From Phallusia mammillata (taxonomy: Eukaryota): a DNA stretch of 64,000 nt. Positions within the stretch are counted from its first letter, which is position 1. The number at the start of each line of letters is the position of its first letter. Below the pieces are notes generated by a model. The model was not told where the DNA came from. It did not search any database and saw only the letters and a list, made by a program, of their open reading frames with translations. Made by a program: the position numbers and the translations under genes. Shown piece by piece: positions 9,401-48,732 of this stretch. The stretch lies in the NCBI GenBank assembly GCA_965637545.1, contig OZ281501.1, positions 6,324,001 through 6,388,000 on the forward strand, read 5' to 3'.

Positions 9401-12400
9401 GGCCATGTGACAAAGCAACTTTTTTAGATGTTACATAAACTGCTTGGTAAGAAAACTTAATTACTTTTTACACCATATATTTTATCTACTCCCTAGTTTA
9501 CCCCTACATTTATGTTTTTTGACCTCATGTTAGTTTACAAGTGTAATGTTTTTTTTTTGAGAATTAATTTTATTGCTGATGATCCTTTTTCAAGTAAAAG
9601 CCTCAGGCTAATGAAACAAAGACACAAAAAATAAATGTAAAAACATACATACCATACGCGCTATGGCACTGTGAATAAAAGTATTACAGAACAGACAAAT
9701 GCTTTTTTACACCACACAAAATTGGGAACAATTAGGAAAACTTGACATATATATATCATACACGAGATTTAGAGTTTTGGTAGCTAAGCCCAATCTGCAC
9801 AAAAAGAGTGGTATATAAATCTAATTTTAATATGACTTGCTTTACTTGCATATTAGTAATTTCTGAGTGTTTAAATTTGTAAAATTGTGTCAAAAATGTT
9901 TGCACAATAATATTAAACATGAATCTTTGCAAGATAACATGGCATTTGTTGCTGTGCTAAAATGAGTCTGGGACATTGTTGTGATTACTGGAAGCAAATC
10001 AATAGCAATTTCAATTGACATAACATCCTGTGTTGGCAGGCATCGAAAAAGCTGTAAAGGACTTGCAACGCTGCACTGTTTCTTATGGAAGATACAAGAA
10101 CCTGCTAAATGGAGAGATTCAGGACAGCTACAAAAGAATCAAACAGGTTATTATTTTGGTTAAACTAAGATATATTCCATCATTTTGGCTCTCTAAAAGG
10201 AGACCCATATTGTTTTCACCATGTTGCCATGTATTTATTCAGTTTTATTCTCTTTTGGTCCAGACTTAGCCATCCACATAAAACATTTGAAGTTGTGAAT
10301 AAACACTCTTTTACTGCTAGTTTTCCTGTGTGTTATTCAAATCTTTTAAAATATTGCATGATTTTTAGGTTTACAAAACTGACATACATTTTTTTGTTAG
10401 TATCAGTGCTGCAGTGTTAATTGTTTGTGATGACATTTGTTTACTATAAATAAATAACTAATGAGACTTATAAATATGCATTTTTGAGTAAAATGTTTCA
10501 TATTTTGCTAGCAAAATGCAAAAAATGTATTTACTTATATTTTTATTTTTTGTTTAGACTTTTGAGGCACTTACCAATGCACTTATGGACAGAGAAGTAC
10601 AATTAATTCGAAACCTGGATGAAATTAAAAACGCAGCATGTGAGCATATATTAAGACAATTCATGCTTCAGTATCATTTGCTCCCTGTTGTCTTTTAAAT
10701 GTACAATTTTGAAGTCCAAAAACTCACTTGTATTGAGTCTTTTCACATGTAGCGAAGGCATATTGTTTTGACATAGTGTTTTTAAATGTTTTTGATGCTA
10801 TTTAATTTCCACCTTTGATTAAAGAAATGGTTGTGTAGGTTTCTTTAAAACATAAAAATGGTTACTTGCTTTGGTGTTATAATAGTCACTTTTTTGACCC
10901 AACGTGTAGCATATAAGAAAGAAGCAAATGCTTCTCAGCCAAACAAATTGATTTGTAAAATTCAAGATATATATTTCACCTATACATGCAACGTGTAACT
11001 TAAACATGGCAAAAAAATTAAAATTTAACTTGTTCAGTTGAGCTAATGGCAAAACGTGAAGCCCAAGCACATGAGTTAAAACGACAAACTGACCGAGTGG
11101 ATGCTATGAGCCACCAGCAGTTGAACGACCTACGAAGTGAAATCAAACATTTTGTCGCTGAACGGAAGTTTGATGAGGAATTGGGTAGAACTTCAAGATT
11201 CACCTTTGACCCCGAAATTCTTTCCAAAGTTATTCCCTCCTTTGGAGAAAGTAAGTCATTGTTTTCAATATATATGTGTAGTTAACAAAACTTTTAGTCA
11301 CAATTGCAGATCATTCGATTTGTTTAACTTGGTGTTTTGTCTTAAAACTAGCACTAATGTGTGGTGTTATAAAATACTTAGTGAATTGTCTCGGGATTTA
11401 TGAGTATGTGTTGTTGCAGTTTCTGCCAAAATTGTTTTCCACCATATTGCAGAAATGCAGGCTTATAACTTATGACCGAAATTGTTTTCAGGAGTTTGGT
11501 AATAACTATATAGTTCACATGTAAATATTTTGAAAACCACAAAGTAAGATCTACTCACATTGTAAAAAGCACTATTGTGGGCATGCTTACTAGAATCAAA
11601 TATAAAAAAAAAACTACTTTGTTATAGTTGAACTGAATTTTCCTAGTATGTCCTCATGCTAACCAGTAAATAAAATACATGACTTTTCAGTAGTCATTAT
11701 TATACGTTGAAAATTGAGGTCATTGTCTGGTGTAGAACTGCGGCTTCGTCGAACGCTTTTTGATTGTTTCCTGTGTATTATGTCCGCCAGGTTCAGCGCC
11801 GTGCACCTGGACGCAGACGTTTCCTATTCTGGCGTATATTACGTCTGCGTGAACCGTAATTTGAGCCTGGTTTGGTTAAGAATAAGCGTGAAGACAGATC
11901 AAACATACCTTGTTACGTTTTTTTCTCTTTAACTGTAGAGAATAATAGGTACACAATTCACGATTTTAGAATTCCGTACCAGAAACAAACTAGCCAGTAT
12001 ATTGGTGTGAAACAGGGGTGTGTAACTTTTGTCACTGTGGGGCCAAATACAATTGCCAAGATTAGATCCTTTATATAACACAAGGTGATTTTACTTTGTT
12101 GCATGCCAAATATGCTTAACTACAAGTAAAATTCGCATTTGATTTAGCCACATATTGCCTTGTCGCAGAAAAATAGCACCGCACACCCCTGGTGTAAAAC
12201 ATAACGTTTCAATAGCAACTGGTGTCATTCTCAAATGAATGAATGTAAAAATCAAAAGGCAAGAGCAAGTAAAAAAGACTTGCTATCGAAACGTTATTCA
12301 CTAATACACTGGTTTGTTTGTTTGTTGAAATCACACATTTTAGCCAGGAAATAGTTTTCTAAATTTTGTTACATTTTTGCATATCTTAGCTTGATAACTA

Positions 12401-15400
12401 ACGTGGACATTATGTATTTTACTTCAGTTGTGCTCATAAGTCCCAGAAAGCATTTTCGGAGCCGAATGGCTAAGGTGTATAATTTTTGGGTAATTGAGGT
12501 AAAAGACTTGACGAAAGTACTTAAGGGTATAAAGAAATGCGTGCATTTGAACTTTGTGGTTTTGCTACGAATTATAAACCTCCTGTAGCGAAAATGTAGA
12601 TAGTTTTACCGTGAGCAGTTGCTTGTGTACAAAACATGTGTTTGGCAATGATGCCCATGGTTTACTATTTAATACAAATATATAACATTTGTCATAACAT
12701 CATAACTTAAGCTGGTTTTATGACATTTCATATTTGTTAGTTTACGCGCGTAACACATCATAGTACGTAAATCATAGTATGCCAAGATTGAAAGCGTAGT
12801 ATCGAATCAACTGGTCACCAAGTATTTCCATTTGGCAAGGCATAGGCTGGAAAAATCTAGCCTGCGGTGGGATTAGAACCGTGCACGACCACGGCCTTTT
12901 CGGGTCTCGATAAACCAACTGAGCTACACAGGCTCAGTATTGAACCCGTCGATGGTCGAATCACAAGCACCGTTGCCTGCCTCGTATCCTGCACATGTCT
13001 GATTCGTAGTAGGGGATCACCAGGTCGACCATTGATCAGCTATGCTAAATTTATAACTGGCATCAGCCCTAATGTGTTCATGCAGACGCTTAACACTTAT
13101 GTCCCTTGTGTTGTTCTCATTTTTAAACTTTAAATTATTCAATTTCAGTTACGGGCATCAAGAACTCGTACACGCCGCGTACGCAAACCGAATCAGCCGC
13201 TTCTTATACCTCCGACTCTGGCACTAGTTTCCCGGTGGCACCTGTCACTGCCAAAGTGTCACCTGCCACCAAACCCAGCTCGTCGCATACACCACCTAGT
13301 CAACTGCCAATCACCGATCCAATCCAGCCTGCTGCCGATTCTTCACGCAATAAGGCACAAATCCCTGTGCCAGATCTCGCACCTACGTCAAATGATAAAG
13401 GTGAGTGAAATTTTTTTCTTTTGTAAAATTTTGAAGGAAAACTGATGCGTATTTAGGTTTTGTTAAATTTCGGCAGTTGCATGTCGCAAACTTGCAGATT
13501 TCGTTGTTTTTTGGCACCTGATTGTGTGTCATAGGTATTGACATAAAACAGTCCTCTTTGAAACCAATTTTGTAGTCGTTTAGGCCTGAAGTCTGAAAAA
13601 ATGCATAGCCCGGACAATCAATTAATCTGTCATTAGAGATTAGACCATTTGGTATGGTTAAGGCACTGCATAAAAAGAATTAGGCACGCAACCATTTACA
13701 TGCAATTTTCGTCCACTTAAAAACTGCAACTATTTCATTGCGACACCCCAAGGCATTTGATATCGTTTTTATGGCAACTTTGCGGTAAAGACTGGCGACA
13801 TCTTATATTTGCTGTTTCAAAATGTCGACGTTCAAAGTGCAAACCGACAATAAATCCACAAACATATGTTCATGCCTCCAGTTGTACCTACATATTAAGT
13901 CAACATGCCACAAAACAGAAAGCCTTGTCAGCTGGTGCAAGATTTTTTAACAACTTTTTGTTATTTGATCATGTTTGTCCAAGGCATGCAACGGTTACTA
14001 GACAATAAATAGGCTACAAATTAAGAGTGATGCTTGTTGTGTATGTATTTTTACCCACAGCAATGCCATGTCTTGTTGAAAATGACTTCTACTTTATAGT
14101 TTCTCACGAAAGCAGGTGTCTAAAGTTGTTAAAAATTGAACAATAGGTCTTGACTAAACAAGTATTGCTCCTCCAATGGTTTTTATCATAAATAATCGAC
14201 GTTGGACGTCCCATACAGGACGCCTTCATCACGATAATGGCATATCTTAAAAGACAAATTTCTTATAAAGCGACAAAAATATTGCACCAAAAAAACACAC
14301 AAAAGCCGCAAAAACAAGCTTGTATCGCTAAACTGGTACTAGCGGAGTGTTAAAACATAGTTTAGTGGTGTAAAATGAGATCTTGCCAACTAAAAATAAT
14401 GAGTCACGCTCGATATCATTTACCCCAACCGTACACCACGCAGTTTTACTAATCGGTAATTTCAAGGCGTACTGCCGGTGTTGTATTTTTGCCCTGTAGA
14501 CTATTTGGTCCAGTTTTGGACATTTTGGTTTGACAAGTGTTATCTATCTTTGTGAGTCAATATTATATCGGTATGGTTCCATTCAAATCGCCGGGGGTTA
14601 TAATTTGTTAATTTAATATCTCGAACTGTTTTCAATACATGCAACCTATATCGTCTTCGCATAATGTTATAATTATAACGCATGAAAAATTAATTGATTG
14701 TACCCAATTTTTTTACACACAAATTTTAGTTTTGCCACCTGCCTTGTTTGTTGCAGTTATTGTAACGTCAATTCCAACTTCACGTAAGCAGTTGGTTTTA
14801 ACCTAATGTTGTTTGAGTATTGAAGTTATTGCGCCAATTCGGACCCATTAAATAGTTGTTGTTTTTCCACATTTTTTATATTATTTGAAAATACAATAGT
14901 TGAATTGTCCAAAATGCGAGACATAGCAGTTATACAGTGGTGGTAAACTCTTATTTAAGCAATGTCGCTTCAGAATGTTGCGTTTATAGGAAGTTCCCCT
15001 ATAGGAGCTCGAATTGTAGCTTGAGGTAATATCACGCCTGGTTGACTACATCCGTTGACGCACGAAAGTAACGAATCTATACAATACCAGGTTTAGGTAG
15101 ACAGCCAGTTCAAGCCCATAAAATATTACAATCTGTATGTCTCGTTACAGTAGTAAAATGTCGTTTTACACCTACCTACAGAATACAAACAAACTATATG
15201 AGTGCATTTGTAGTTCCTATGACTCGTTAAAATTTGTGTTTTACCCATGCAATTGGTATCCTTTTGTACGCTTTCCTTGTGGCTAGTGCACATGCTGTAA
15301 CGAGACCGAAAAACAACAACACTCAAAAAGGTCTACAGACATAACACCGTACAGTTCACATAAAAAACTTTCTGACATTCAAGTCTGAATGCGTGGTGAG

Positions 15401-18400
15401 AATCACGTCGCAGCCGAAACTCGCTGTACGCACGTGGGAAATCCCCTTGTCATTATGACGCTATTGACACGCGTCATACATTTTCAAGTGCCTCCGCTTG
15501 CCTTTGGGCGCGAGTTGGCAAAACACCGCCGCTATTTTGTCCCATTTTTACCGATTTCATGACTGCCAGGGCAGTGCTATTCAACCGTTTTTGTGATATG
15601 CACCATCAGGTTTTTTTTAAGGTTTGGTTTGGGTGACCGCTAAGTAGTTTTAAGAGACCGCAAGTGTTTCATTTAAATAACAAAAAATAGCCATATTTGC
15701 TTAAACGAATTATTTATTAGGCTACTGGTAAATTGGGGGGACCGTTTCGGTCCCCCAAAACACCTTAAAAAAACACTGCACCATTTATAACCAATGCCGT
15801 GATCTTATGCACCTTTTACGACTGAACAATTAACCGACATTTTTAGCTAGTTTATGGAGAAACGCAAATGTGGATTAATGTTTTTTAGGGAAACGAAACT
15901 GTTTTAAATTGGGGGTACGCATGTGTTCATTCACAAACTGCAAATTGCTCGCAATTATCAAACTTTTTAAGCCTCAATGTATCCCTGAACCCTATATGTT
16001 CCCCTTTGGTACACCTGTAAGTGTTATGTTGCTTCCAGAGGTTCACCGTGTATCCAGGTTAAAGAGCGCTTTACTATAGGCCAGGGCATTATTGTAATAA
16101 GATTGGTTAAATTTGCCATGAAAGTTCAGAAAATTTCTTAAACTTTTGCCCTAATGTAGGCTTGCAGACAATTTGATATTATAATACATATATCATTTTT
16201 AGGAGACTGCGTGATTTCGGCAATTCGTGTACTCCTTTGATAATTTGATCAAAACTGACTTACTTAGAACTAAAAGGCCTTGTATAGCCATGTTTATAAA
16301 ATGTATCCTTCGGCCTGCCCTGGGGCCACGTCCCGCTATTCAGATGCAATAGCACTACCTGGTACATTTCAAAACTTCACTGGTGCTTTGCACTCTATAA
16401 TTCGGGTTAAAATACAACATGTTCCAATGGCATTTGTGGTATTAGGGTTGCCCTATGGAGGCATTGGAATATCTAAATGTACATTAACTTCATACGCCAA
16501 AAAATCCAAAAAGTGTTTTTTAGAATTTCAGTGGAATTTATTTTGCCAAGATCGCTTACATCAGTGGTTCTGGACGTTTTTTTGTGCTTGTATCTTTCCA
16601 ACGTTAATGAATTTTCTTTGTACCTCTTGTATTTTCACATCAATAATTTTGACACCCTATAGCAGCGCTCTTCAACCTTTTTTCCCGTTGTATACCTTTT
16701 TGCAATTTTCAAGCAACTTTGTATACCCTACACATGGTAATTTTTAATTGCGCACATAAAGTAAAACAGTCAACTAATAGTTACGGTACTTGCCTGGTCA
16801 CGTGAATTATTGTTATACTAGACCAGGGGTAGATAACTTGTCGCCGTGAACATGTAAACTGAAATGCATGTACTGGCGGCCGTGATGTAAATAAAACACG
16901 GTACGTATTTGGATTGTAAAACTAGTTTGTGGGTCTGGAAAAAATATTATCAGCCCAGAAGCCACTCAATCTACGGAACAAGCTAGAAATTAAATTCGCT
17001 ATCAGGCACTATTAGGAAGGATTTACCATTCGACCATTTAAAAAATCAGTTAATTTTGTTTATTTGACTTCATCTCAAAAAGTTCGAAAAATCCTATTTC
17101 GTTTTCGCAATCCGTTACTCCAGGAATGTTAAAAGTAAAATCTCAGAAAGTAACAGGTAGATGCTTATTGCTTCATAATTCACATTGTTGGCGCAACAAT
17201 CCGAAACTGACGCAATAATGTTCACAACAAGCAGGTCAGTCTCACAGGTCATGAATGACGATGCTATGCCTTCCTGCATTTCATACAAAATAGTGACCTT
17301 TAATAACACTGACCGCAGCTGTATTCCCTTCGTATACCCTTTTTCAGTCGTATACCCTAGTTTAGATGCGGTATACACTTGGGTATACAGTATACCCGGT
17401 TGAAGAGCACTGCCCTATAGTGCTTCAACGTTGTTGCTTCGTAATCCCACGTTTCGAAACACTGGCGTTACTTGGAAAACGTTAAAAAGTAGGTTTTCAA
17501 ATTTAAATCCCATACCGCTTACCTATATGCTATCACTAAACCACAATATGAGTCACCAACCATAGCCTACCTGGCGATGCGAACACGCTATGAACTGTAT
17601 TTATATTTAGACAAATGTGCATGTCATATCCCGGCACGCACAGGTCATTCTGAGTATTATGAGGTGTATGTTATGCGTAATCACTATTAGCTTAAATGAT
17701 GTACTTAAAAGCATCCTAAATTATAGTTTAAAGGTTAGAGATACATTAAACATTTAAACTGGAACTTTTCAACAAAATGGGGAAATCCCTGTATTTTGCC
17801 TAAAAATTCAAGAATTCTTTCAAAGAAAATAGATTTCACCTGAGTAATAGGCTTCTTCAGTATCGTATTCATATAGAAAGACAATAAAGCTAAGAGTGCA
17901 TTATTATTCTAACTTCAGCCATTCATCTTTCAGACTTACGGTTTTATATTTATGAACATTTTAAAGTTTTTTTTTTTCGACAATAGTCCCTGTGCTTTTA
18001 TGCCAACAGTTTCTTTTTGTATTTCAGCCAAAGAAATAGCGAATGGTCATGTAGAAGATTGGGCTGCAGAATCATCTGACCTTCCTTTGCCTGTAAGTTC
18101 ATGAATTATTGCCTTTTTTACCTTCTTATTCAGCTTTGCACATAAACCTCGGTTTAACCGGATTCAGTTAATCCGGATCTTCGCCTCATTCGGACAAAAC
18201 TGAACCTACAAATAATTTCGTGTGGTAAGGCTTTAACTAATCGACATCGATTGATCCGGATCTTCGCCTAACCCGGTAAAATTTGTTGGTCTAAAGTCTA
18301 AACGGTTCCGGATTAACCGAGGTTTACTCTAGTCCTAAATGTCTTCGTATGCCCAAGTAACTTGACACCGAAGGATAAAGAGTTACAATTACATTTATGC

Positions 18401-21185
18401 AAAGAGTACAATATTTATAGCAACAAACTTGATACAACGCTGCTTTTGTCATTTGTAACAGGAGAGTCCAGCTTCTTGGGCGAGTGGAACACCTCTTCTT
18501 ACACCGGACGGCACTTTTAAAGAGAATTCTATGGGAACGCCGCAACCGCAAAGGTAGAACTCAGATACTGGTTTTCAAAACACGAAAGCGCGATTGAAAA
18601 ATTATATGTTACAAAGTCTGTAGATGTGTTAATGTGCCTTCGAGTCTGATTTTAAACTTTTGACTTGATTTTCCGTAATATTAAATAGAACTAAATACTA
18701 TGAACATAATTTCATAACTGGGACCATTCCTGAATTTATGCAGGCCAGTGATAATGACACACTTATATAAATTATAGTACGCCATGCCCATTGAAGGCGT
18801 TATACCGAATCAGCCGGTCGCCAAGCATTCCCATACGGCAAGGCATAGGCTAGAAAAAATGGCGTATTGTGATTTGAATATAGAACTAACAATTACGTTT
18901 CGAATAAGCGTTATTTGTCCTCAGCACTAAGGGTTAACGTAATTCAGCAATACATGTAACCATGGTCATTACCTTATTCAAATAGAATTATGGTCGAATT
19001 TGAATAACCTTATGTCCATTTGAATTGAAACCTAAAATAAATTTGTCCCAGCACCAAGTCACAGACTTCTAAACAAAAGAAAGGGGAAAAGTCAAGGTAA
19101 CAATTGTCGTGCGTCATAGATGCTTCACACTTATTAGTTTTAATGCTTAGTTAGTTCATCTTAATTTTGGGTATATAAGGTGTCCTAGCGAAGCTTACAA
19201 CAAATTTCATTTCCTGAAACTTGTTGCTTATAATCTTTTAGCAATAGACAAATTTAAACATTAGAGCAGAATTTAAACTTGCCATAACCGTTGCTTGAAC
19301 TGTACAGATAAGATGAACTTGATTTTTCGGCCAACTTTTGAACAGTAAATCTCGGTTTAACCGGATTCAGTTAATCCGTATCTTGGCCTAATTCGGACAA
19401 AACTTGAGGTACAAATGATTTTTTATGTGGCAAGGCTGATGGACATCGGTTAATCCGAACCTTCGCCGAATCCGGACAAATTTTTGGTCCAAGCAGGTCT
19501 GGATTAACCGGGGTTGACTTGTATTTAAAATTATAACTCGATGTCAGGTATCAGGACCACGTTTTAATCAGTTCGATTGTGATTAAGTTAAGTAAAGAAG
19601 ATGTGGAAAAATATGTAGCGTATTTTTCCAACGTTTTACCTTTAAAATTCTTACAACAAACTTCGGGGAATTCCTACATAACCGTTGAGAGCTAATGAAT
19701 GAAGATTCCCGGCTCAAAAGGCTTGACCTTATTTTAATGGCGGGTTAATTTCATTCATGTCTGGGTATTTTCTGTGAAATCCCCTGTGGTAAAATACTAC
19801 CTAGCGGAAATTGTGCGTATTCTACTAACTGAATGCACAGCTGGATAACTTTGGATGTATTGAACAAAACAGATTTTGGAGACAACTTTAATGTCAACAC
19901 ATTTGTTTACAGTTAAACCAAGAATTTTGTGTATTTTTGCAGGACGCAACGGCGGGACCGAAACAAAAAAGCATCTGTTTCGGACAAGGTTAGTAACTGG
20001 CTGTGGTAAAATAAATGTATTTAGATTTAAATGGCCATTGTCTGTGTTAAAACTTTCAGAAAATCAGTATTCAATTAGATCCACTTTTTACCTTATTTTA
20101 AAGATTTGCATAAAGTAATGTACTTTTTGTGGTAAGACACATACAAATTAACGTATTTTCATTCTTAACTAAGCTATTTTTACTTAACAAATTTAGGTCG
20201 ATTTTTCAAGTAAGCTTCTCAATTACGCCATTTTATTCAACTCTATTTCTATTTAGGATCAAGACCTCATGCCGCCTCCCGACCAAATCCCTTCATCTCG
20301 TGGAGGATCCGCGCCCGCACAGAACGAAATGAAACGTGATCGAAGTGGCGAACGCTCCTCAAGTAACCACAACAACACCTCGAGAAATTACAGAAGCCAG
20401 GATTACAAGGCATCTGGAGATCGGGCCCAGCAATTCAGGGACAAACCTCGTGGGGGATACAGGGGTTACAGAGGTGGCTACCGGGGCAACCGTGGGGGCT
20501 CCTACCGCGGATCGTACCACGGGCCCCCGAGAGGCGAACAGCAGCCATTCAGTGACCGTTCAAACGACTATGGGTCGCGTCCACCAAGTGGTCAGTACAG
20601 AAATGACCGAGGTGGACGTGGTTATGATAACAGGCCATCACGTGGACAATACGGTGGTAACAAGCGTTATAATGATGATAATCGGAATCAAAAGTTTAAT
20701 AAATCGGAAAGCGATGGACCGCCAAAGAATGTGAACAAAGCTTCTGAAGCCAGCAAACCTGTCGCGTCCAAGGTAACTTTTTAAAAAATTGAAAAGAATG
20801 TTTACAAAGCTAAAAAAATGTCAGGATTTCTCATATCGAGTGGCCGACCACCTTTAGCAGTTAATATTTTTTTTTTACTCCATTATACTGCATTAGTCCG
20901 CGAAGTTGGATGCTAGGCCATTTGGAGAATCTGTGTCTTATGTGAATAAGCACACGTATCCCCCCAAAAAGGTTACATGAAATTGTTTCCTTTGAAAAAA
21001 AGTTTTATGCTTGTGCTTTTTTGCTTGGGATAACTGTTTACTGATGCATTAGGTGACGTATTTTGTTGACTTGAAATTTACAATTTCAACAACAACGTGT
21101 TTGTAAACGAACTATTTCACAAAAAAACATATTACCGAACTCCTTGTCTATAATTCAGGCACCGACCAGCTCCAAACAGGAATAA
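6471..21185 (+). CDS. SPATS2L: SPATS2/SPATS2L-family protein (DUF1387; stress-granule/nucleolar RNA-binding type), 15 coding exons, about 698 aa
   Basis: Exons 6471-6491, 7128-7236, 7687-7850, 8288-8618, 8961-9001, 9225-9255, 10040-10146, 10558-10639, 11038-11250, 13149-13400, 18028-18092, 18462-18553, 19943-19988, 20257-20772, 21159-21185. All GT-AG and phase-consistent (2097 nt). KEKIAAVRAVVSDRSNDQIVLVLQ, IEKAVKDLQRCTVS and LRSEIKHFVAERKFDEELG match recalled human SPATS2/SPATS2L motifs. Probably co-orthologous to both. Confidence 0.93.
6830..6870. repeat. Short tandem repeat, three copies of AGTCTATGCTAA(G)
   Basis: agtctatgctaaggattat agtctatgctaaagaag agtctatgctaagga seen directly. Confidence 0.8.
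7128..7236 (+). CDS. SPATS2L: SPATS2-like exon 2 (conserved N-terminal helical, UBA/CUE-like segment)
   Basis: IAAVRAVVSDRSNDQIVLVLQHHDGDADKTIADFLEG; tttacag acceptor, G|GTGATG donor. Confidence 0.92.
7687..7850 (+). CDS. SPATS2L: SPATS2-like exon 3 (basic NLS-like stretch)
   Basis: GNADDILTEWQHAGQNKSAKAKKRKKKL...; ttgtag acceptor, GTAAGC donor. Confidence 0.92.
8045..8249. mobile_element. Non-autonomous hAT element (MITE), right TIR eroded
   Basis: Left end CAGTAGTTCTTAAACT (hAT/Charlie-type); perfect 8-bp TSD CAATAGAG at 8037-8044 and 8250-8257. Confidence 0.75.
8288..8618 (+). CDS. SPATS2L: SPATS2-like exon 4 (low-complexity Ser/Asn/Thr linker)
   Basis: Open 331 nt between gaactag and CAG|GTATTT; phases fit neighbouring exons. 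Confidence 0.88.
8961..9001 (+). CDS. SPATS2L: SPATS2-like exon 5
   Basis: ctttgcag acceptor, GTAAGT donor, GNQHATNGQTATSQ. Confidence 0.85.
9225..9255 (+). CDS. SPATS2L: SPATS2-like exon 6 (31 nt)
   Basis: tttttacag acceptor, GTAAGT donor, HDTGISANKK; phase needed to link exons 5 and 7. Confidence 0.82.
10040..10146 (+). CDS. SPATS2L: SPATS2-like exon 7 (conserved core)
   Basis: IEKAVKDLQRCTVSYGRYKNLLNGEIQDSYKRIKQ. Confidence 0.95.
10558..10639 (+). CDS. SPATS2L: SPATS2-like exon 8
   Basis: TFEALTNALMDREVQLIRNLDEIKNAA; tgtttag / GTGAGC. Confidence 0.92.
11038..11250 (+). CDS. SPATS2L: SPATS2-like exon 9 (conserved coiled-coil core)
   Basis: ELMAKREAQAHELKRQTD...KHFVAERKFDEELGRTSRFTFD...FGE; GTAAGT donor. 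Confidence 0.95.
12013..12191. mobile_element. hAT MITE, 179 bp
   Basis: TIR CAGGGGTGTG / CACACCCCTG; TSD GTGTGAAA vs GTGTAAAA (7/8). Confidence 0.8.
12757..12934 (-). mobile_element. tRNA-derived SINE
   Basis: Minus strand AGCCTGTGTAGCTCAGTTGGT (A box)...GGTTCTAATCCCACCGCAGGCT (B box, acceptor-stem pairing) with a broken anticodon arm, then a body shared with 18775-18858 and a short TACTATGAT tail repeat. Confidence 0.75.
13149..13400 (+). CDS. SPATS2L: SPATS2-like exon 10
   Basis: ITGIKNSYTPRT (cf. human ITHPKNNYSSRTP) then Pro/Ser-rich; GTGAGT donor. Confidence 0.92.
15572..16071. mobile_element. hAT MITE related to the 16663 element, diverged
   Basis: Ends CAGTGCTATTCAACC and GGTTAAAGAGCGCTT resemble the 16663 TIRs; similar GTAT(A)CC subterminal motifs; TSD not clean. 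Confidence 0.6.
16663..17412. mobile_element. Non-autonomous hAT element, 750 bp
   Basis: 15-bp TIRs CAGCGCTCTTCAACC / GGTTGAAGAGCACTG (14/15), perfect TSD CCCTATAG (16655-16662, 17413-17420), repeated GTATACCC subterminal motifs. Confidence 0.9.
18028..18092 (+). CDS. SPATS2L: SPATS2-like exon 11
   Basis: atttcag / GTAAGT; AKEIANGHVEDWAAESSDLPLP; phase-consistent. Confidence 0.82.
18141..18328. mobile_element. pogo/Tigger-like MITE copy 1
   Basis: TIR AAACCTCGGTT(T)AACCGGA / TCCGGATTAACCGAGGTTT with internal TTAATCCGGA repeats; clearly homologous to 19343-19521. Confidence 0.8.
18462..18553 (+). CDS. SPATS2L: SPATS2-like exon 12
   Basis: tgtaacag / AAG|GTAGAA; ESPASWASGTPLLTPDG...; phase-consistent. 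Confidence 0.82.
18775..18858 (-). mobile_element. 5'-truncated copy of the 12757 SINE
   Basis: Shares GGCAAGGCATAGGCT(A/G)GAAAAA and the upstream body with 12780-12856; lacks the tRNA head. Confidence 0.65.
18971..18988 (-). ncRNA. Ciona-type spliced-leader exon plus GT donor (SL RNA orphon or pseudogene candidate)
   Basis: Reverse complement of 18971-18988 is ATTCTATTTGAATAAG|GT, a 16/16 match to the recalled Ciona SL followed by donor GTAATG. No Sm-site-like motif recognised downstream. Confidence 0.5.
19343..19521. mobile_element. pogo/Tigger-like MITE copy 2
   Basis: CAGTAAATCTCGGTTTAACCGGATTCAGTTAATCCG... ends GGATTAACCGGGGTTGACT; same orientation as 18141. Confidence 0.8.
19943..19988 (+). 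CDS. SPATS2L: SPATS2-like exon 13
   Basis: tttttgcag / AAG|GTTAGT; TQRRDRNKKASVSDK. Confidence 0.82.
20257..20772 (+). CDS. SPATS2L: SPATS2-like exon 14 (RGG/YG-rich low-complexity tail)
   Basis: Contains ORF 20269-20784 (RGGYRGYRGGYRGNRGGSYRG...); acceptor ctatttag; donor AAG|GTAACT. Confidence 0.9.
21159..21185 (+). CDS. SPATS2L: SPATS2-like terminal exon (APTSSKQE*)
   Basis: Acceptor ttgtctataattcag, in phase 0 with exon 14, TAA at 21183-21185. Confidence 0.7.
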   Translation, partial: APTSSKQE

Positions 21186-27400: not shown

Positions 27401-29001
27401 CGGGTTCGGGCCGGGTTTCAGGCTTGTACTTTTGGGTTCGGGCTCCAATTTCAGGTTCGTTTACAACTCTGATAGGCTATACTTTTGAGTCTGAATTTGT
27501 GTTTCTGTAATAATCCTAATCAAGGCACAAACTAACCTCCAGCATAATTTGCCACAACAAGATAGTGTTTGTCATCGATTTGGAAACTTTTCCAGCATCG
27601 AGCTGACATTGTTTGAATGTACTGGAAAGGAACGAAAAGCCTTCGTCTGCGCTCCCATTTAAATATTACACTTTTGGCTGACGGCGAGTTCTCGTCATTG
27701 CCCTGGTTGGCAACGGCCAGAAAATGCTGAAAATGAAAACATTGGTCAGTCAAAAATTTGAGCAGTCAATATAGGCAAACGTATTTATCTATTAAGTGAA
27801 ATTTCTGGCATGAGTGCGCTGGTTTCAATTTAAGTTTTTAACCGCTTTTTTAAAAATTCATTGTATGTGACATGACTTAGAAGCAGAGCTATTTTCGTAA
27901 CTCAAGTACATTGTTCATTACAATACGTGCCTCATTTTCGATTGTGAAAAACTCCCAGTCTCTTGCAGTATCCGTTTTGATACTTTGATGGTGATAAAAC
28001 ACTTTTCTGGATTCATCCCACTTGTATATAGTTGAATCCATGCTTCGGTTTCTGCCCTGGTTTGCAAATGCCAGAAACAAACCTTCCCCTTCTATACTGA
28101 AGACTTCCACGTCAAAAGTTTTGCTTTTAGTTATCAGGTCACTAAAGTCGACAATGTAGTCCAGTTTTTCAGGCTCTACAAAAAAATGTTTTTTAAAGAC
28201 AATGTGAAAAACACAGCCAACACCGGTAAAACAATGGAAATATAGCATGAGTTTAATGATGAAAATAACGGCACAATTAGACGTAAAAAGCGACATGCTT
28301 AATTTTTCAAACGTTTCGGCAATGAACAGATCCGTATATCATGTGTTGTATGGCATATTTGTTTATCTCATAGATTTAGAGGAATAAATTCGAAACATCT
28401 TGGATTTCCTAATATTTTGCGATATAAGGTTTCCAAAAGTGTAATAACGCCTAATGGATACTAGTTACGTAAGTCATACACTTGTATCCCAGACAAAAAT
28501 CATCATAATATTATTATGGCGCAAAACCCGTAAAAAGGGGGCAACTTGACAAACAGGCAGAAATACTTACTGGTTGCAAATCGCTTCCATCTTTCGCCCT
28601 CGCACATTTGAAGGTGACCTACTGAAGGCTTGTATAAGAGCTGACCTTCGTTTGTTGCGTCACAACTTCGCGTTTCGTCTTGGTGGTCGATTTGAACTGT
28701 GGCTGTTCCTGGTAGCGAAGCTGCAAATGTAATTCATTAGTTTTTCACTTATCAGGCCGCTACGTGGCGCCCTTAAGCCTGTCACATAGACAAAACGTCC
28801 GCAAGATACCCGATACTGCTACATCTTTTGGGGTCAGAGATTTGTTAACCTAATCCTTTTTTATTGCCAACTTTATAGACAAATCAATGATCACTTCCTT
28901 TTGTGTCAAACAACTTTAAGTTAAATGCTTAAATCTAGCGTTTTACTTGGTTTGATAATTGAATCGTTGAACACAATTTAACTGTTTTATCGAATAACCT
29001 C

Positions 29002-32000: not shown

Positions 32001-35000
32001 TTTGGTGTCGACTTCCCCCAATGAACCAGACAGTTTATTAAACATACGACCGAACGGTTTATTTGGGTAAACATGGCCAGCTGAACTCACTGATGCAAGT
32101 CAAATAGACGGCTGCGTTTTCGATAAATTGCCCGCAGTTAAGACTTTTTACTAATGTCAGCAATTTACAAAAACCTTGTTTGGAGGCACTGCTACAATCT
32201 GTCTTAAATTTAAAGTGTTTGGTATTGTTGTTTTGAACGAATTGTCAAATTGGAACCCAATTCCAACCTTGTGATAATTAATTAATACGTGTACATCTGT
32301 TATAGATTGTTTGTTAAACAGGACAAAAACTTCAAAAGTTTAATCAATTCCTATTTTAACTTTTATCTCTTAATATAAGACATAACTGGATTTAATATGT
32401 GTTTTATTTGGGACTTAAAACCCGTTAAACGTATCATGTATGAAGTAGTAAGTGGTTTAGTGTACAATGTACTCCTTCTGTCGTAATTTTAACGATTATG
32501 TAGCATCATGTAAATCGGCATGCTTGATGATGATCAAGGTACGTCCTACTGACGTGTATTAAAAAGCGATGAGTGACCGTTTGAGAACATCACACGGTGA
32601 ATACTTCGAGCTAAAATATAGGGAGGACAGCGCAATGGGTTTATAACAATACCGTTCCGAAATAGTTTTAAACGCTTAAATAAAAAACAGATTTACTTTT
32701 TGTAATGAAGTATATGGCGACATACATTGATCTGTGTGTTGTTTCTTTGTATTTTCACAAATTTGAACACATATTCATTACTGAGGTCAGCCCTGAAGCG
32801 TTTATGCAGACCAGCGATTGCGATACACTATAAGTAAATCATAGTACGCCAGGTCTATATTAAAGCGCAATATCAAATCATCTCCCAAGCATTTCCATAT
32901 TTCTGAAAATGGTTTATCAATCAAACGGTTTCCATCAGTGTGTTTTGTTATGCCATCGTTTTTTTTTATTTTGCTTGTTAAAAAATATAGGTTTGTGCAC
33001 CAAAATCGAAACACGTACCTTTGCAAATATGATATTAACGGAAATGGAGTACATTTGCCATAATGTATTAGTACAAAGAAGGTTTGAATTTAAAATCAAA
33101 GGAGTCAGCTTCAAATCTTTGCAATTTGATCCGTCTAACTGCCATGTTCCACTTTAGCGTTACTTAGCCATGATTGGCACGCAATTTTAGCGACTCGTAT
33201 TTCCCACGTAATATGGTTAACGATTTCATCATACCGTGCCTGTCGGGAAGCTTCGCTGTCATTTAGTTGTCAGACTCGAAACAGAACTCCAATTGCCCGA
33301 TTTTTTTTCCTATGTCGCAAATGTCTTGAGTGGGTGATATTTTTCGATTACGTCATCTGTGCTTACTACCTATCCAGCCGTGATAAGCGCCACAATTTTA
33401 CGGCGGGTTGTAATTTTGACGGCGTTAAAGCAGAAAAAAAATGCCAGTCTATATTTCGTGGCAACACCATACCTCACGCCAGATCCACATTTGGCTAAAT
33501 TTCGATAGGGTTTCGACACGATTATAAAATTTTACATTGGAAACTAAGTTTTGAAGTTAGTTTTGTTGATTTTTTAATGATAATACCTTACCCCGACCCT
33601 AAAAACCGTATCCGTCAGCATTTTTAAAGGTGTACCGTTTTGTGCTCTTTGTGCCACTAATCGAAATTTAGCTAAATGTATGCCTGCCGTAAGGTACGGT
33701 GTGAGTAGATTTTCCATGTTTCGTACCAACATCTGGTAAAACAACGTTTTCGCAATGATTCGCCATTTACCGCAACTTCACAGGCTTTCCAGGTATGTTA
33801 CGGGTAGTAAATAATTGTAAAGTGCTGTAAAACACCTGTGATTACACGGTTGGAAGAGCCAACATTCTTGTTGTGCATGACAGATAAGTTGACAGTCTCA
33901 AAAACAAGCTGACTCAATGCAGCGAGACGTTTCAACAAACATTATAACCGAGTCCGTTTTCTTCGCACGCCGTCTAGTCCAGGGACCACTCATAACGCCT
34001 TATAACTCTCGTGTTACACTAAAACGCATATCGTGCTGATGTTAACAGACAAAACAGGTGTGCTACAATGTTGCCAATGTAGTTACAGGCTGATTTAACA
34101 GGGTTTCCTGTTTTAAACACTAAAATCGTGGGCGCACATCCTCTATTTTAAACCCCTAGGGACCGCTTGTGATTCACACCATGATAAAATGGCCCTTCGG
34201 TTGGGTTAAATTGATCATGGAGGCATAATATGGAACGTCGCTTTTAAGATTATGGTTCCACGCGGGGCGCCTGTTCGTCACCTAAGGCGGCGCTATGACG
34301 TAATGCAAACCATTCAAAAGCGTTGGAATTTAATTTTGATGGAAGTTTTGAGTCGACGGGATGCTGCGACTTAATTCATCACCCCGTTGACAAAACTCCT
34401 TTTAACACCCAAGTCACATTGATGATTAATAAATCCGAAAAGGAACACAGGGAAAGTGGGATTATGTTGGGTTCCCGTGCCGTACACACAGTTGTTCGTG
34501 TTTTGTTATTAGCATCCTGACCGTCGTAACGTTGGTCGCTGGATTTTTTCCAAACAACCAAGAATTTTTTTGTCTGAAAGGGGCTTTACTGCTTCATATG
34601 TCTTATGTCGTCATTGTTTTACCTTGTGTTTGCGTCTATTAGGCATTGTAGAGGTATTTTGAGAGAGATTGGTCTGAGCTTTTCGGAAAGGTTTGGGCTC
34701 AAGTGTTAAAAATGGGCTATAGATTTAGAACCTAATTTACGCTCTAGCACAGTGGTCGGCAACCGCCGGTCCGCGGCCCGGTACCGGTCCGCGAGGAGTT
34801 ACCGGGCCGTATAATTTTTCAGGTTAAATGCCATGAACATTTTGCCCATGTATTTCGGGGATGATAAACTAATTTAAGCGTTTTTATTGCTAAATATTTG
34901 TAGTTTTTTATGACCGGTCCGCGGTAAACTTTTCATTTCAAAAGCGGTACGCAGTACAAAAAAGGTTGCCGACCCCTGCTCTAGCACATTTCCACCGTAA

Positions 35001-47000: not shown

Positions 47001-48732
47001 ACTGTGACGTTTTTACTCTCACAAAGTTTTACGAACACGTAAGTCTCCGTTAATAGACGCAGTGGTCAAGTGCAGCAGCATTTCGGCATACTCATGGTGT
47101 TATTTTTGAGATTGTGAACTATAGTAAAGTTGGGCAAATAAGAAAGCCATTACAGTTTTTTTGGTTGCTTTTATCATACAATATGATAAAACGAAACAAC
47201 GGTTGGTTTACGTAACCTCGCGACTGCCAGTCGACATACAGTGGCACTTGACAAGGAGAATGCGCGACCTCCACTAAATCATTGTGATATTTCGTCTGTA
47301 GCCTTTTCACTTGACAAACAGAAAGACGTGAATCGCTGGGATCCATTGATCTGTGCTCTATAAATTTTGCGGCGTTGCCGAGATACACAATGTCGAGGTT
47401 TGGAAAGTCGTTACTTTTATCAGTCTTGGGATGTTCACTTTCCAAACAAAAGTGAATTATGTGTTGACGCTTTCCATAACGCGAACATTGACTGCAGCAA
47501 AATGTCTTTGAAACACTAGTCACAAAGTTTGATGCACGCTTTTTAAGGTGTGTTTAGTTACATTTTTTTCTTTAGACGGCTGAATTACTTTGTAGCATTT
47601 GTTACAAGAATGTTTTACCCAAACAAAGAACATTTTGTTGCTATGTTTTTTGCTTTTATTATAAAATATGATTGATTTAAGTTTTCTTTGACACTTAGTT
47701 AATAGAGCAAGTACAAATATGCCTTTGACTAAAGCAATGCTAAAGATTTTCTGAAGACCATAGTACGCCCGGTCCATTGAAGGCGCGTTGTACCAAATCT
47801 TACAGAAAAATTTATACCACCATTTGGTCAAATTTGTGCCTCCACATACAACTAGCTTTAATAATGAAAGCGGTTTACGTCATCCATGATAAGTTAGATA
47901 ATTTTACACTTTACAACATCCAAGCCTATACTCAAATTGAGCGCTAAATCAATGATGTGCGAATCGTCAACCGCAAATTGACACGTCGCTAATTTGTGAC
48001 AAGTAGATTTACATTGGCGTCGCGGTGTCCACTTTCTCATCGTCACACCTTCCAAGTGTCAATCAAACTTTCTTCGTTGAAGCGTGGTAAACAGTGCTTG
48101 ATGTACAACGTTCGACTTTGAGCCAGGCGGTTCGGTTGAGAACCACAGACCACAGAGTGTGTGGTGTCACTTGTAAAGTGCAAATTATCACTTGTTGGCG
48201 GTTTTTGTCCGCATATTGCGCTGTCAAGCCAACTTGTACGCTGTCTTTGCCTGTCTTAACCCAACCACCTGATTGATTGCATTGTGAAGTTTTGATATTT
48301 GGACCGTGGCAGTTTGCATGGATTGTGTATTACGGACTCGAGTGCCTCATTATAGTTTTGCGCAAATTGTATTAAAACACTTTGTCGGAGTGTAAAACTG
48401 CTAAAATGGCTCATATGTTTTCGTGTTTTTTACTGCTTCCTATTGTAAACACTCTATTCGAATTGGCTTGGCCATTAAGGATAAAGAACCAGGCGTGCTT
48501 ACAATATTTTTTACTTGTGCCTTATCCCTTTTGATTTCTTTTGTCTCCCCCCTTCCCCAGGTAAATTATAGTGTACGTTTGTGGGCAAATTGCACAAAAT
48601 ATTTCCGGTGTAAAGTGAAACACACACTATCTATACAGCTGTACCGTAATGCACCAAATTCCATGCAACAAAGATACCAACAAACACCGCACACAAATGG
48701 ACGATATTAAGTCTAACCAAGATGGTTATCAT
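24336..48732 (-). CDS. TSPEAR: Thrombospondin-type laminin G domain and EAR repeat-containing protein, 14 coding exons, about 664 aa
   Basis: Exons 5'->3': 48732-48645 (tentative), 40705-40606, 40430-40280, 39664-39465, 30477-30387, 29260-29143, 28720-28571, 28175-27931, 27726-27537, 26972-26902, 26739-26581, 26417-26242, 25959-25861, 24492-24336. Phase-consistent (1995 nt). FPTEFSIIVT, VDGKWHTIVI, SRRRRRNRFTGLLRQ, EKLDY, repeated (A)xDWEFFTI...FLAVAN EAR motifs and C-terminal RWQGVEQFVPVH match recalled human TSPEAR colinearly. Confidence 0.93.
25081..25509. mobile_element. hAT MITE, 429 bp
   Basis: Perfect 15-bp TIR TAGTGATGCACCGAA / TTCGGTGCATCACTA; perfect TSD GTATTCAG; TTCGGCCGAA subterminal repeats. 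Confidence 0.93.
25861..25959 (-). CDS. TSPEAR: TSPEAR EAR exon
   Basis: ALDFEFFTVGRDSYLVAASSSDSNKNHISTVYR; ttgttacag / GTAAGG. Confidence 0.92.
26242..26417 (-). CDS. TSPEAR: TSPEAR EAR exon
   Basis: TSGATDWEHFSISGRHFLAVANYY...QTIPTHG; ttttcag / GTGAGC. Confidence 0.93.
26581..26739 (-). CDS. TSPEAR: TSPEAR EAR exon
   Basis: SLDTIGAYDFEYFKIGSNHYLAAANSYDG...HYVE; GTAAGA donor. Confidence 0.93.
26902..26972 (-). CDS. TSPEAR: TSPEAR EAR exon
   Basis: RGQREKSWVWVWEPFQRIFSKYQ; tttttgcag / GTGAGT. Confidence 0.9.
27180..27471. mobile_element. hAT MITE, 292 bp
   Basis: 11-bp TIR CAGAGTTGTAA / TTACAACTCTG; TSD ATAGGCTG vs ATAGGCTA; GGGTTCGGG subterminal repeats. Confidence 0.88.
27537..27726 (-). 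CDS. TSPEAR: TSPEAR EAR exon
   Basis: HFLAVANQGNDENSPSAKSVIFKW...YLVVANYAG; cattttcag / GTTAGT. Confidence 0.93.
27931..28175 (-). CDS. TSPEAR: TSPEAR first EAR exon (probable GC donor)
   Basis: PEKLDYIVDFSDL...ARDWEFFTIENE; 3' boundary GAG|GCACGT (alternative GT 9 nt further). Confidence 0.9.
28571..28720 (-). CDS. TSPEAR: TSPEAR linker exon
   Basis: SCDATNEGQLLYKPSVGHLQMCEGERWKRFAT resembles human PCTEVEDAQFWFD...LYLCVGNEW; GTAAGT donor. Confidence 0.9.
29002..29039. repeat. (GT)n(TA)n compound microsatellite
   Basis: gtgtgtgtg followed by about 14 TA units; explains the three spurious YIYIYI ORFs here. Confidence 0.95.
29143..29260 (-). CDS. TSPEAR: TSPEAR exon, end of laminin-G domain
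   Basis: GLLRQVKFVPGADASIHLCS (human [20 protein letters not shown]); GTGAGT donor. Confidence 0.92.
30387..30477 (-). CDS. TSPEAR: TSPEAR laminin-G exon
   Basis: NLEEPFPTKLNTQGSRFHIASRRRRRNRFT; GTGAGT donor. Confidence 0.92.
34750..34978. mobile_element. hAT (Charlie/hobo-like) MITE, 229 bp
   Basis: TIR CAGTGGTCGGCAACC / GGTTGCCGACCCCTG (14/15); perfect TSD CTCTAGCA; CCGGTCCGCGG subterminal repeats. Confidence 0.93.
38327..38394 (-). mobile_element. Diverged terminal fragment of the 34750 MITE family, inverted
   Basis: Aligns by eye to the reverse complement of 34912-34978. Confidence 0.6.
39465..39664 (-). CDS. TSPEAR: TSPEAR laminin-G exon
   Basis: DRRTILLAVRLQRDRLHF...IVDGKWHTIVITVTQSNVKFTLDC; ctttcag / GTAAGT. 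Confidence 0.93.
39870..40011. mobile_element. Eroded fragment related to the 27180 MITE
   Basis: CCCGAA/GCCCGAC repeats ending GCCCGACTTAAATACAACTC, like the inverted 27180 left end. Confidence 0.45.
40280..40430 (-). CDS. TSPEAR: TSPEAR laminin-G exon
   Basis: DASEVMTNCVYFPTEFSIIVTF...NEFLLTL (human [21 protein letters not shown]...NEYLLTV). Confidence 0.92.
40606..40705 (-). CDS. TSPEAR: TSPEAR exon 2
   Basis: TGATDLLAISLAESVHFPIGVEVTQDKGVSGYR; tttgttgcag / GTGAGC. Confidence 0.88.
44600..44830. mobile_element. Degenerate relative of the 25081 hAT MITE
   Basis: TTTCGGTTTCAGCCCGA and TTTCGGCCCGA motifs; ends GGTGCATCAACT. Confidence 0.5.
48645..48732 (-). CDS. TSPEAR: Candidate TSPEAR exon 1 (signal peptide)
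   Basis: MITILVRLNIVHLCAVFVGIFVAWNLVHY plus a phase-1 donor (G|GTACAG) matching exon 2; acceptor gtttttag 14 nt upstream of the ATG; total length then close to human TSPEAR. Donor is weak and sequence is not conserved. Confidence 0.45.

What the first reader, a model, noticed from the sequence alone, without database searches (positions are those of the whole stretch)
18943..19007. Orphan spliced-leader exon with splice donor, antisense inside a SPATS2 intron
Seen: minus strand ATTCTATTTGAATAAG|GTAATGACCATGGTTAC, an exact 16-nt match to the recalled Ciona spliced leader plus a good donor, with GTAATGACC/GGTTAC able to form a small hairpin. An 18-nt exact match is very unlikely by chance in 64 kb. 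Known: ascidian SL RNAs are about 46 nt, donate this exon in trans and are mostly tandemly clustered. Caveats: I see no Sm-like site (I recall AGCUUUGG for Ciona), and the match is one arm of a 10-bp inverted repeat (18974-18983 / 18998-19007) in repeat-like DNA with TT(C/T)GAATAA motifs next to a SINE fragment. Inference: a solitary SL RNA variant, an SL orphon captured by a mobile element, or a genomic SL exon able to cis-splice onto antisense acceptors and mimic trans-splicing. A transposon family carrying the SL would be a novel way to disperse leaders.
Basis: partly seen in the sequence, partly recalled or inferred. Interest (0 to 1): 0.75.

Follow-up and report, generated by a model that had tools for sequence, protein, structure and literature searches.

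The report
Dead spliced-leader relic in intron
An exact copy of the sea-squirt spliced leader followed by GT does lie antisense in a SPATS2-like intron, but it is a lone, decayed leftover, most likely the front end of an old reverse-transcribed RNA copy, and not a working leader gene.

Summary
The exact 16-base Ciona spliced leader (SL) plus GT lies at 18971-18988 on the minus strand. It sits in the 1391-base intron between RNA-supported exons 18462-18551 and 19943-19988 of a plus-strand SPATS2-like gene. It forms one arm of an 18/22 inverted repeat and lies 114 bases upstream of a 5'-truncated SINE on the same strand.

It fails the tests for a working SL RNA gene:
- No Sm-type site in the 173 bases behind the donor.
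- No tandem unit.
- Single-copy DNA depth.
- No Rfam hit.
- No RNA contig or splice joint at the site.

It is also not part of a repeated transposon family.

Chance is unlikely. About 2e-4 exact matches are expected per window, and four of the window's ten SL-core 8-mers cluster within 154 bases here.

SL+GT copies in other ascidian DNA are mostly heads of repeated families. They show the same extra direct or inverted SL fragments just upstream.

My best reading (about 0.5) is the decayed 5' end of an SL-tagged, reverse-transcribed RNA with a fold-back at its head. The main rival (about 0.3) is a fragment of an SL RNA gene or SL RNA.

Dispersed SL pseudo-loci inside Ciona genes are already published, and this scan has flagged other orphan SL+GT sites in this genome. 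Interest is low.

The parts
18973..18988 (-). Exact 16-nt spliced-leader sequence (ATTCTATTTGAATAAG)
   Evidence: Identity with the published Ciona SL: PMC1488885, PMC7986045.
18971..18972 (-). GT directly behind the leader, in the context AAG|GTAATG. It looks like a splice donor, but no use of it has been shown.
   Evidence: No joint is listed at this place in RNA contigs.
18859..18970 (-). Unique body behind the leader and its GT (114 nt counted from 18972). It has no Sm-type site, no hammerhead, and only an 11-codon ORF.
   Evidence: An unbroken DNA contig covers 18802-19371 at single-copy depth.
18998..19019 (-). Upstream arm of the inverted repeat. It is a decayed mirror copy of the last 10 nt of the leader plus the first 12 nt of the body (18/22 against 18962-18983). 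Read directly, 19007-19025 also resembles SL+GT.
18866..18911 (+). Two degenerate leader-like pieces on the opposite strand (18866-18883 and 18892-18911). They belong to the local cluster of SL-core motifs.
   Evidence: Four of the window's ten ATTTGAAT/ATTCAAAT 8-mers fall within 18872-19025, and none of 5000 random placements reached that.
18698..18858 (-). 5'-truncated body of a very abundant tRNA-headed SINE, on the same strand as the leader, starting 114 nt behind it
   Evidence: other copies at 12768-12855, 32764-32899 and 47760-47799; high depth, and other copies run on past 18858 into a tRNA-like head while this one does not.
18462..18551 (+). Host exon (90 nt) that bounds the intron on the left
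   Evidence: RNA contig depth in three runs; AG/GT splice sites.
19943..19988 (+). Host exon (46 nt) that bounds the intron on the right
   Evidence: RNA contig depth; AG/GT splice sites.
19337..19519 (.). MITE-like repeat of about 190 bp with terminal inverted repeats. A second copy lies at 18135-18328 (76% identity). This is context only and not part of the leader relic.
   Evidence: very high depth.

Best explanation
The site is a dead, single-copy relic of the host spliced leader. It is most likely the 5' end of an old reverse-transcribed copy of an RNA that had received the leader by trans-splicing.

On this reading:
- The GT is simply the first two bases of that RNA's body.
- The mirror-image partial leader copy just upstream came from the reverse transcriptase folding back or jumping template when it reached the RNA's 5' end.
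- The same-strand 5'-truncated SINE that begins 114 nt downstream is either the 3' partner of a template-switch chimera or a later insertion.
- The site makes no SL RNA and has no shown role in the SPATS2-like gene.

Shown: the anatomy, the single-copy status, the missing SL RNA gene features, and the recurrence of the same head architecture elsewhere. Inferred: the RNA-copy origin, the fold-back mechanism, and the link to the SINE.
For: 1. The leader is exact and not a chance match, and SL-core motifs cluster locally.

2. The features that define an SL RNA gene are absent. There is no AGCTTTGG within 2 mismatches and no generic Sm site in 173 nt. There is no tandem array. Depth is single-copy. 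Rfam gives nothing.

3. In 120 SL+GT loci from other ascidian-type DNA, the leader almost always heads a repeated family, so GT there is body sequence and not a donor.

4. Those heads show the same anatomy. Of 124 loci, 4 have a strong inverted copy of 'leader 3' part plus body start' directly upstream, and none of about 120 control segments reaches the score seen at this locus. Of 123 loci, 17 have an extra direct SL core and 4 an inverted one within 70 nt upstream, against 1 and 0 of 117 controls.

5. The mirror arm here spans the leader/body junction, so the junction existed before the duplication.

6. A second, decayed leader copy fused to a hammerhead-like core lies 1.1 kb away at 17815-17879 on the same strand. 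Leader-tagged retrocopies therefore did land in this gene.

7. Earlier unchecked notes of this scan report many leader-headed retroelements in this genome.

8. The 5'-truncated SINE lies on the same strand at 114 nt.
Against: - No target-site duplication was found (best flank alignment no better than shuffles).
- There is no poly(A) tail.
- No parent RNA or parent locus was identified, because this genome could not be searched.
- The body does not match the hammerhead type of leader-tagged copy, nor any comparator beyond chance.
- GT with a fair donor context is expected in only about 1 in 10-16 random bodies.
- Nine extra bases lie between the mirror arm and the leader, which a simple fold-back does not predict.
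- The SINE could be an unrelated later insertion.
- I could not obtain this species' own SL RNA intron sequence, so a short gene-derived fragment is not excluded.
Confidence: 0.5

Rival explanations
1. SL RNA gene-derived pseudogene or orphon. A short piece of the SL RNA gene, or of unspliced SL RNA (leader plus the first bases of its intron), was copied or captured here, for example during break repair, and then decayed.
For: The GT and a fair donor context follow the leader directly. SL RNA pseudogenes are reported as 'rife' in Ciona (PMC7986045, citing Yeats 2010). SLFinder lists 38 dispersed SL loci, many inside genes and 21 with a donor (PMC7346339, Table S5). A 6-nt direct repeat, GACCAT, flanks a 22-nt 'A + leader + GTAAT' piece. 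One DNA contig joint in run X2 starts exactly at 18968, the end of leader+GTAAT, but its 21-letter side at 80% likeness is within the range of chance.
Against: No Sm motif is found, even with 2 mismatches, in 173 nt, although the leader itself is perfect. The site is not in a tandem unit. The bases upstream of the leader do not match the 'taaggc' reported upstream of the leader in Ciona reads (PMC7986045). The inverted repeat includes body bases beyond GTAAT.
Confidence: 0.3
2. A live solitary element on the minus strand: either a variant SL RNA gene with a non-canonical Sm site, or a first exon that cis-splices from 18973 and so mimics trans-splicing.
For: The leader and GT are perfect while the neighbouring repeats are 20-25% diverged. 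The first 46 nt can fold into two small hairpins.
Against: The fold is no better than shuffles (z -1.26 for 46 nt and -0.06 for 69 nt). There is no Sm-type site. No RNA contig lies on 19007-19340, and no joint at 18972/18973 is listed in three RNA-type runs. There is no Rfam hit. A perfect 16-mer is not unlikely at about 9% decay (0.91^16 is about 0.2).
Confidence: 0.04
3. A chance match, or a routine hairpin or MITE subterminal motif in AT-rich DNA, unrelated to the leader.
For: The leader is AT-rich and partly palindromic. From composition I estimate about 0.4 exact chance matches in a genome of about 120 Mb. The hairpin gives only generic sub-threshold miRNA-like hits.
Against: About 2e-4 exact matches are expected per window, and GT also follows. 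Four of the window's ten SL-core 8-mers cluster here. The stretch is not a repeated family. True leader-derived copies greatly outnumber the chance expectation in ascidian DNA.
Confidence: 0.03
4. A sense-strand role: the host intron RNA carries an 18-nt perfect complement of the SL RNA 5' end, which could pair with SL RNA and affect processing of the SPATS2-like transcript.
For: Only the perfect complementarity itself.
Against: No evidence of any kind was found. RNA contigs show ordinary splicing of the flanking exons.
Confidence: 0.02

Closest known systems
Dispersed SL RNA pseudogenes and putative SL loci of Ciona intestinalis (Yeats et al. 2010, as cited in PMC7986045; SLFinder Table S5 in PMC7346339)
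   Same: Exact or near-exact 16-nt leader outside the 264-bp tandem array, often inside protein-coding genes, often followed by GT, and lacking the Sm motif.
   Different: I could not check whether this locus is one of the published ones, because the species and assembly are not known to me. Its body (GTAATGACC...) differs from the published examples (GTTGC, GTTAC, GTTGT).
Leader-headed retroelement and retrocopy families of ascidians
   Same: The leader sits at the head of a body, and extra direct or inverted leader fragments lie just upstream.
   Different: Those are mostly multi-copy families. This locus is single-copy, has no recognisable element body and no hammerhead.
Relict spliced leaders in retroposed dinoflagellate genes (Slamovits and Keeling 2008; from my own knowledge, not checked here)
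   Same: Leader sequence fixed in DNA by reverse transcription of trans-spliced RNA, sometimes as several leader remnants side by side.
   Different: Different phylum and leader. Here some remnants are inverted and no coding body survives.
Template-switch chimeric retrocopies such as U6-L1 in mammals (Buzdin et al. 2002; from my own knowledge, not checked here)
   Same: The 5' part is copied up to the true 5' end of a second RNA and fused to a 5'-truncated retroelement on the same strand.
   Different: Target-site duplications and a 3' tail define those chimeras. Neither could be shown here.
Functional Ciona SL RNA gene (46-nt RNA in a 264-bp tandem unit; PMC7986045, PMC6836712)
   Same: The 16-nt leader exon plus GT.
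   Different: No Sm motif, no tandem unit, single copy, and intronic and antisense to a host gene.

Membership tests
Functional Ciona-type SL RNA gene | Exact 16-nt leader exon | tested here: met
   PMC1488885.
Functional Ciona-type SL RNA gene | GT splice donor directly behind the leader | tested here: met
   (AAG|GTAATG).
Functional Ciona-type SL RNA gene | Sm-binding motif AGCUUUGG within about 25 nt of the donor (PMC7986045) | tested here: not met
   no match with up to 2 mismatches and no generic RAU3-6GR site in 173 nt.
Functional Ciona-type SL RNA gene | Lies in a tandemly repeated unit (264 bp, hundreds of copies) | tested here: not met
   no tandem repeat; no other copy in the window; single-copy depth, unbroken contig 18802-19371.
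Functional Ciona-type SL RNA gene | Expressed as a small capped RNA that starts at the leader's first base | not testable with these tools
   Only assembled contigs of RNA-type runs were available. None lies on 19007-19340, and small RNAs would be missed.
Retrocopy of an SL-trans-spliced RNA | Leader forms the exact 5' boundary of an insert | tested here: inconclusive
   No empty orthologous site was available. Extra leader fragments upstream blur the boundary.
Retrocopy of an SL-trans-spliced RNA | Target-site duplication and a 3' tail | tested here: not met
   (flank alignment no better than shuffles). There is no poly(A), and the body runs into a truncated SINE.
Retrocopy of an SL-trans-spliced RNA | A parent gene or RNA with the same body exists elsewhere | not tested
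   No search of this species' genome or transcriptome was open to me. The single read-laying run could not resolve 18859-18972.
Retrocopy of an SL-trans-spliced RNA | Head anatomy as in known leader-headed copies (mirror or tandem leader fragments just upstream) | tested here: met
SL-tagged Penelope-type hammerhead retrocopy | Hammerhead core directly behind the leader | tested here: not met
   Searches give no hit at 18859-18972. A CTGAGGA...GAAA string at +49 scores with neither Rfam nor my model.
MITE or transposon family carrying the leader | Many copies sharing the leader-bearing sequence | tested here: not met

The most novel reading that the evidence does not exclude
The locus is alive. 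Either it is a solitary variant SL RNA gene that works without the canonical Sm motif, or it is a minus-strand first exon whose cis-splicing puts a genomic 'leader' on antisense transcripts and so mimics trans-splicing.
Probability: 0.03. Interest if true: 0.65.

Novelty: new member of a known kind. Interest (0 to 1): 0.17.

Why it matters
The practical value is as a caution. In ascidian genomes an exact leader followed by GT is not enough to call an SL RNA gene. Such sites can also make cis-spliced or unspliced reads look trans-spliced in SL-mapping pipelines.

It also adds one small data point to a pattern seen across ascidian DNA: leader-tagged RNAs are copied back into the genome, and their heads often carry mirror-image or tandem leader fragments. 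That pattern may record what the reverse transcriptase does at a capped 5' end.

The locus itself has no sign of function.

Tried and rejected
- Rfam on 4 kb and again on 201 nt found no SL or hammerhead family, only sub-threshold hairpin-type hits.
- I built a covariance model from leader-hammerhead heads of other ascidian contigs. It gave no hit on the body behind this leader, though it found a decayed copy at 17815-17864.
- Tandem Repeats Finder and a manual test for a 36-nt period showed no array.
- A search for target-site duplications found nothing above shuffles.
- Aligning the 114-nt body to 125 comparator bodies gave nothing above the null. A 12-nt match to L037 is within chance.
- BLAST of the window against the 120 metagenome loci gave zero hits, so these come from other species.
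- I could not get the full Ciona SL RNA or gene sequence from papers. Vandenberghe 2001, Yeats 2010, Matsumoto 2010 and Ganot 2004 are not held, and the supplements gave only the leader.
- Findings look-ups by sequence and by Sm motif came back blank.
- The joint 18328 to 18968 in run X2 was considered as a sign of a second leader+GTAAT copy. I set it aside because a 21-letter side at 80% likeness is expected by chance among thousands of MITE copies.
Exons were handled one at a time by reference.
Full report
**Observation.** The minus strand at 18973-18988 is an exact copy of ATTCTATTTGAATAAG, followed by GTAATGACCATGGTTAC.
- It is the only hit in the window even with two mismatches allowed. 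Shuffles give 0.07 such hits.
- From the base composition I estimate about 2e-4 exact hits per window.
- The 16-mer is the published Ciona intestinalis spliced leader (PMC1488885 Table 1; PMC7986045).
It has a 10-bp exact core and 22-nt arms, 18962-18983 and 18998-19019, with 18 of 22 complementary.

**Setting.** Plus-strand ORFs at 10030-10266 and 11046-11282 hit Pfam SPATS2-like (E 8e-11 and 6e-26).
- Contigs of three RNA-type runs, together with AG/GT sites, define plus-strand exons 18462-18551, 19943-19988 and 20255-20773.
- The leader therefore lies antisense in the 1391-nt intron 18552-19942.
- That intron also holds a 5'-truncated copy of a very abundant SINE at about 18698-18858 on the minus strand. 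Other copies in the window and in the DNA run continue into a tRNA-like head, and this one does not.
- A MITE-like repeat of about 190 bp lies at 19337-19519, with a sister copy at 18135-18328.
- The stretch that carries the leader, 18859-19336, is single-copy. Depth is about 350 against a baseline of 300-400, one unbroken contig spans 18802-19371, and the window holds no other copy.

**Is it an SL RNA gene?** The published gene makes a 46-nt RNA with an Sm motif, AGCUUUGG, within about 25 nt of the donor. It sits in a 264-bp tandem unit of hundreds of copies (PMC7986045, PMC6836712). This site lacks those features:
- No match to that motif with up to two mismatches, and no generic Sm site, in 173 nt.
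- No tandem repeat.
- Nothing from Rfam.
- A 46-nt fold that is no better than shuffles (z -1.26).
- No RNA contig on 19007-19340, and no joint listed at 18972/18973. Contigs cannot exclude a small RNA.

The leader and the GT are the only gene features that are met.

**Is it chance or a repeat motif?** Neither.
- Four of the window's ten occurrences of the leader core 8-mer (either strand) fall within 18872-19025. None of 5000 random placements reached that.
- Gapped alignment finds several decayed leader-like pieces on both strands around the perfect copy.
- The stretch is not a repeated family.

**Comparators.** They share no similarity with this window, so they come from other species.
- In nearly all of them the leader heads a multi-copy family, so the GT there is body sequence and not a donor.
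- One family is a leader fused to a minimal hammerhead.
- These heads show the anatomy seen here. Of 124 loci, 4 have a strong inverted copy of 'leader 3' part plus body start' directly upstream. No control segment reaches the score of this locus.
- Of 123 loci, 17 have a further direct leader core and 4 an inverted one within 70 nt upstream, against 1 and 0 of 117 controls.
- Earlier, unchecked notes of this scan report leader-headed LINEs, LTRs, hammerhead retrocopies and mRNA retrocopies in this same genome, and several other orphan leader+GT sites.

My hammerhead model does not hit the body behind this leader. Its best hit in the window is 17815-17864 on the minus strand. This hit directly follows, and overlaps by one base, the only other leader-like 16-mer with three or fewer mismatches, at 17864-17879. 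A decayed leader-hammerhead retrocopy therefore lies 1.1 kb away in the neighbouring intron.

**Interpretation.** The mirror arm spans the leader/body junction, so leader and body were already joined when the duplication arose.
- Together with the comparator anatomy, this points to an RNA-derived origin. A reverse transcriptase copied a leader-tagged RNA to its 5' end and then folded back or jumped.
- The same-strand truncated SINE 114 nt downstream fits a template-switch chimera, but it could equally be a later insertion.
- Against this reading: no target-site duplication, no tail, no identified parent, nine unexplained bases in the hairpin loop, and a GT that would be a roughly 1-in-10 coincidence.
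- The main rival is a short fragment of the SL RNA gene or of unspliced SL RNA. I could not test it properly because the species' SL RNA intron sequence was not obtainable.
- Both readings make the site a dead relic. I put that at about 0.8 combined, the live-element reading at about 0.04, and pure chance at about 0.03.

**Novelty.** Dispersed leader copies outside the array are already published for Ciona and regarded as pseudogenes. Many lie inside genes and many have a GT behind them (PMC7986045; PMC7346339 Table S5). This is one more member of that kind, so interest is low.

**Limits.**
- The species was not identified.
- Its use of this leader rests on the literature for Ciona, on the retrocopy at 17864-17879, and on unchecked scan notes.

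Noticed in passing
window 17815-17879 (-): A degenerate leader (13 of 16 bases) is followed after 3 nt by a hammerhead-like core (CTGAAGA, a stem, GAAA, a TCTA loop). This is the best hit in the window for my model built from leader-hammerhead heads of other ascidians (17.1 bits, rough E about 0.03). Rfam hammerhead models do not see it, and DNA depth is single-copy. It looks like a decayed leader-tagged Penelope-type retrocopy in the neighbouring SPATS2-like intron.
   Followed up: partly
L001-L120 (metagenome contigs, e.g. L039:1947-2006, L081, L093, L018, L067): This is a large set of contigs from other ascidian-type DNA in which the same 16-nt leader heads many repeat families, including a leader+hammerhead family. 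Some carry tandem arrays of the leader itself (L067, L080) and some have palindromic heads (L081 28 bp, L043 26 of 27 matching, L093 18 bp).
   Followed up: partly
window 18135-18328 and 19337-19519: Two copies of a MITE-like element of about 190 bp (76% identity) carry CGGATTAACCG-type terminal inverted repeats, at very high genomic copy number. The size recalls the 193-bp Cimi-1 MITE of Ciona. That is from memory and was not checked.
   Followed up: no
window 12768-12960 (-), 18698-18858 (-), 32764-32899, 47760-47799: An abundant SINE whose tRNA-like head ends in a T5-6 run just before the body. The body alone is what lies next to the leader relic.
   Followed up: partly
window 27892-28296 (-): An ORF with two EPTP repeats (Pfam PF03736, E 1.5e-13). 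A second gene therefore lies on the minus strand downstream of the SPATS2-like gene.
   Followed up: no
window 20269-20781 (+): The last large SPATS2-like exon encodes an RGG/YRG-rich low-complexity tail. RNA contigs of three runs cover it.
   Followed up: no
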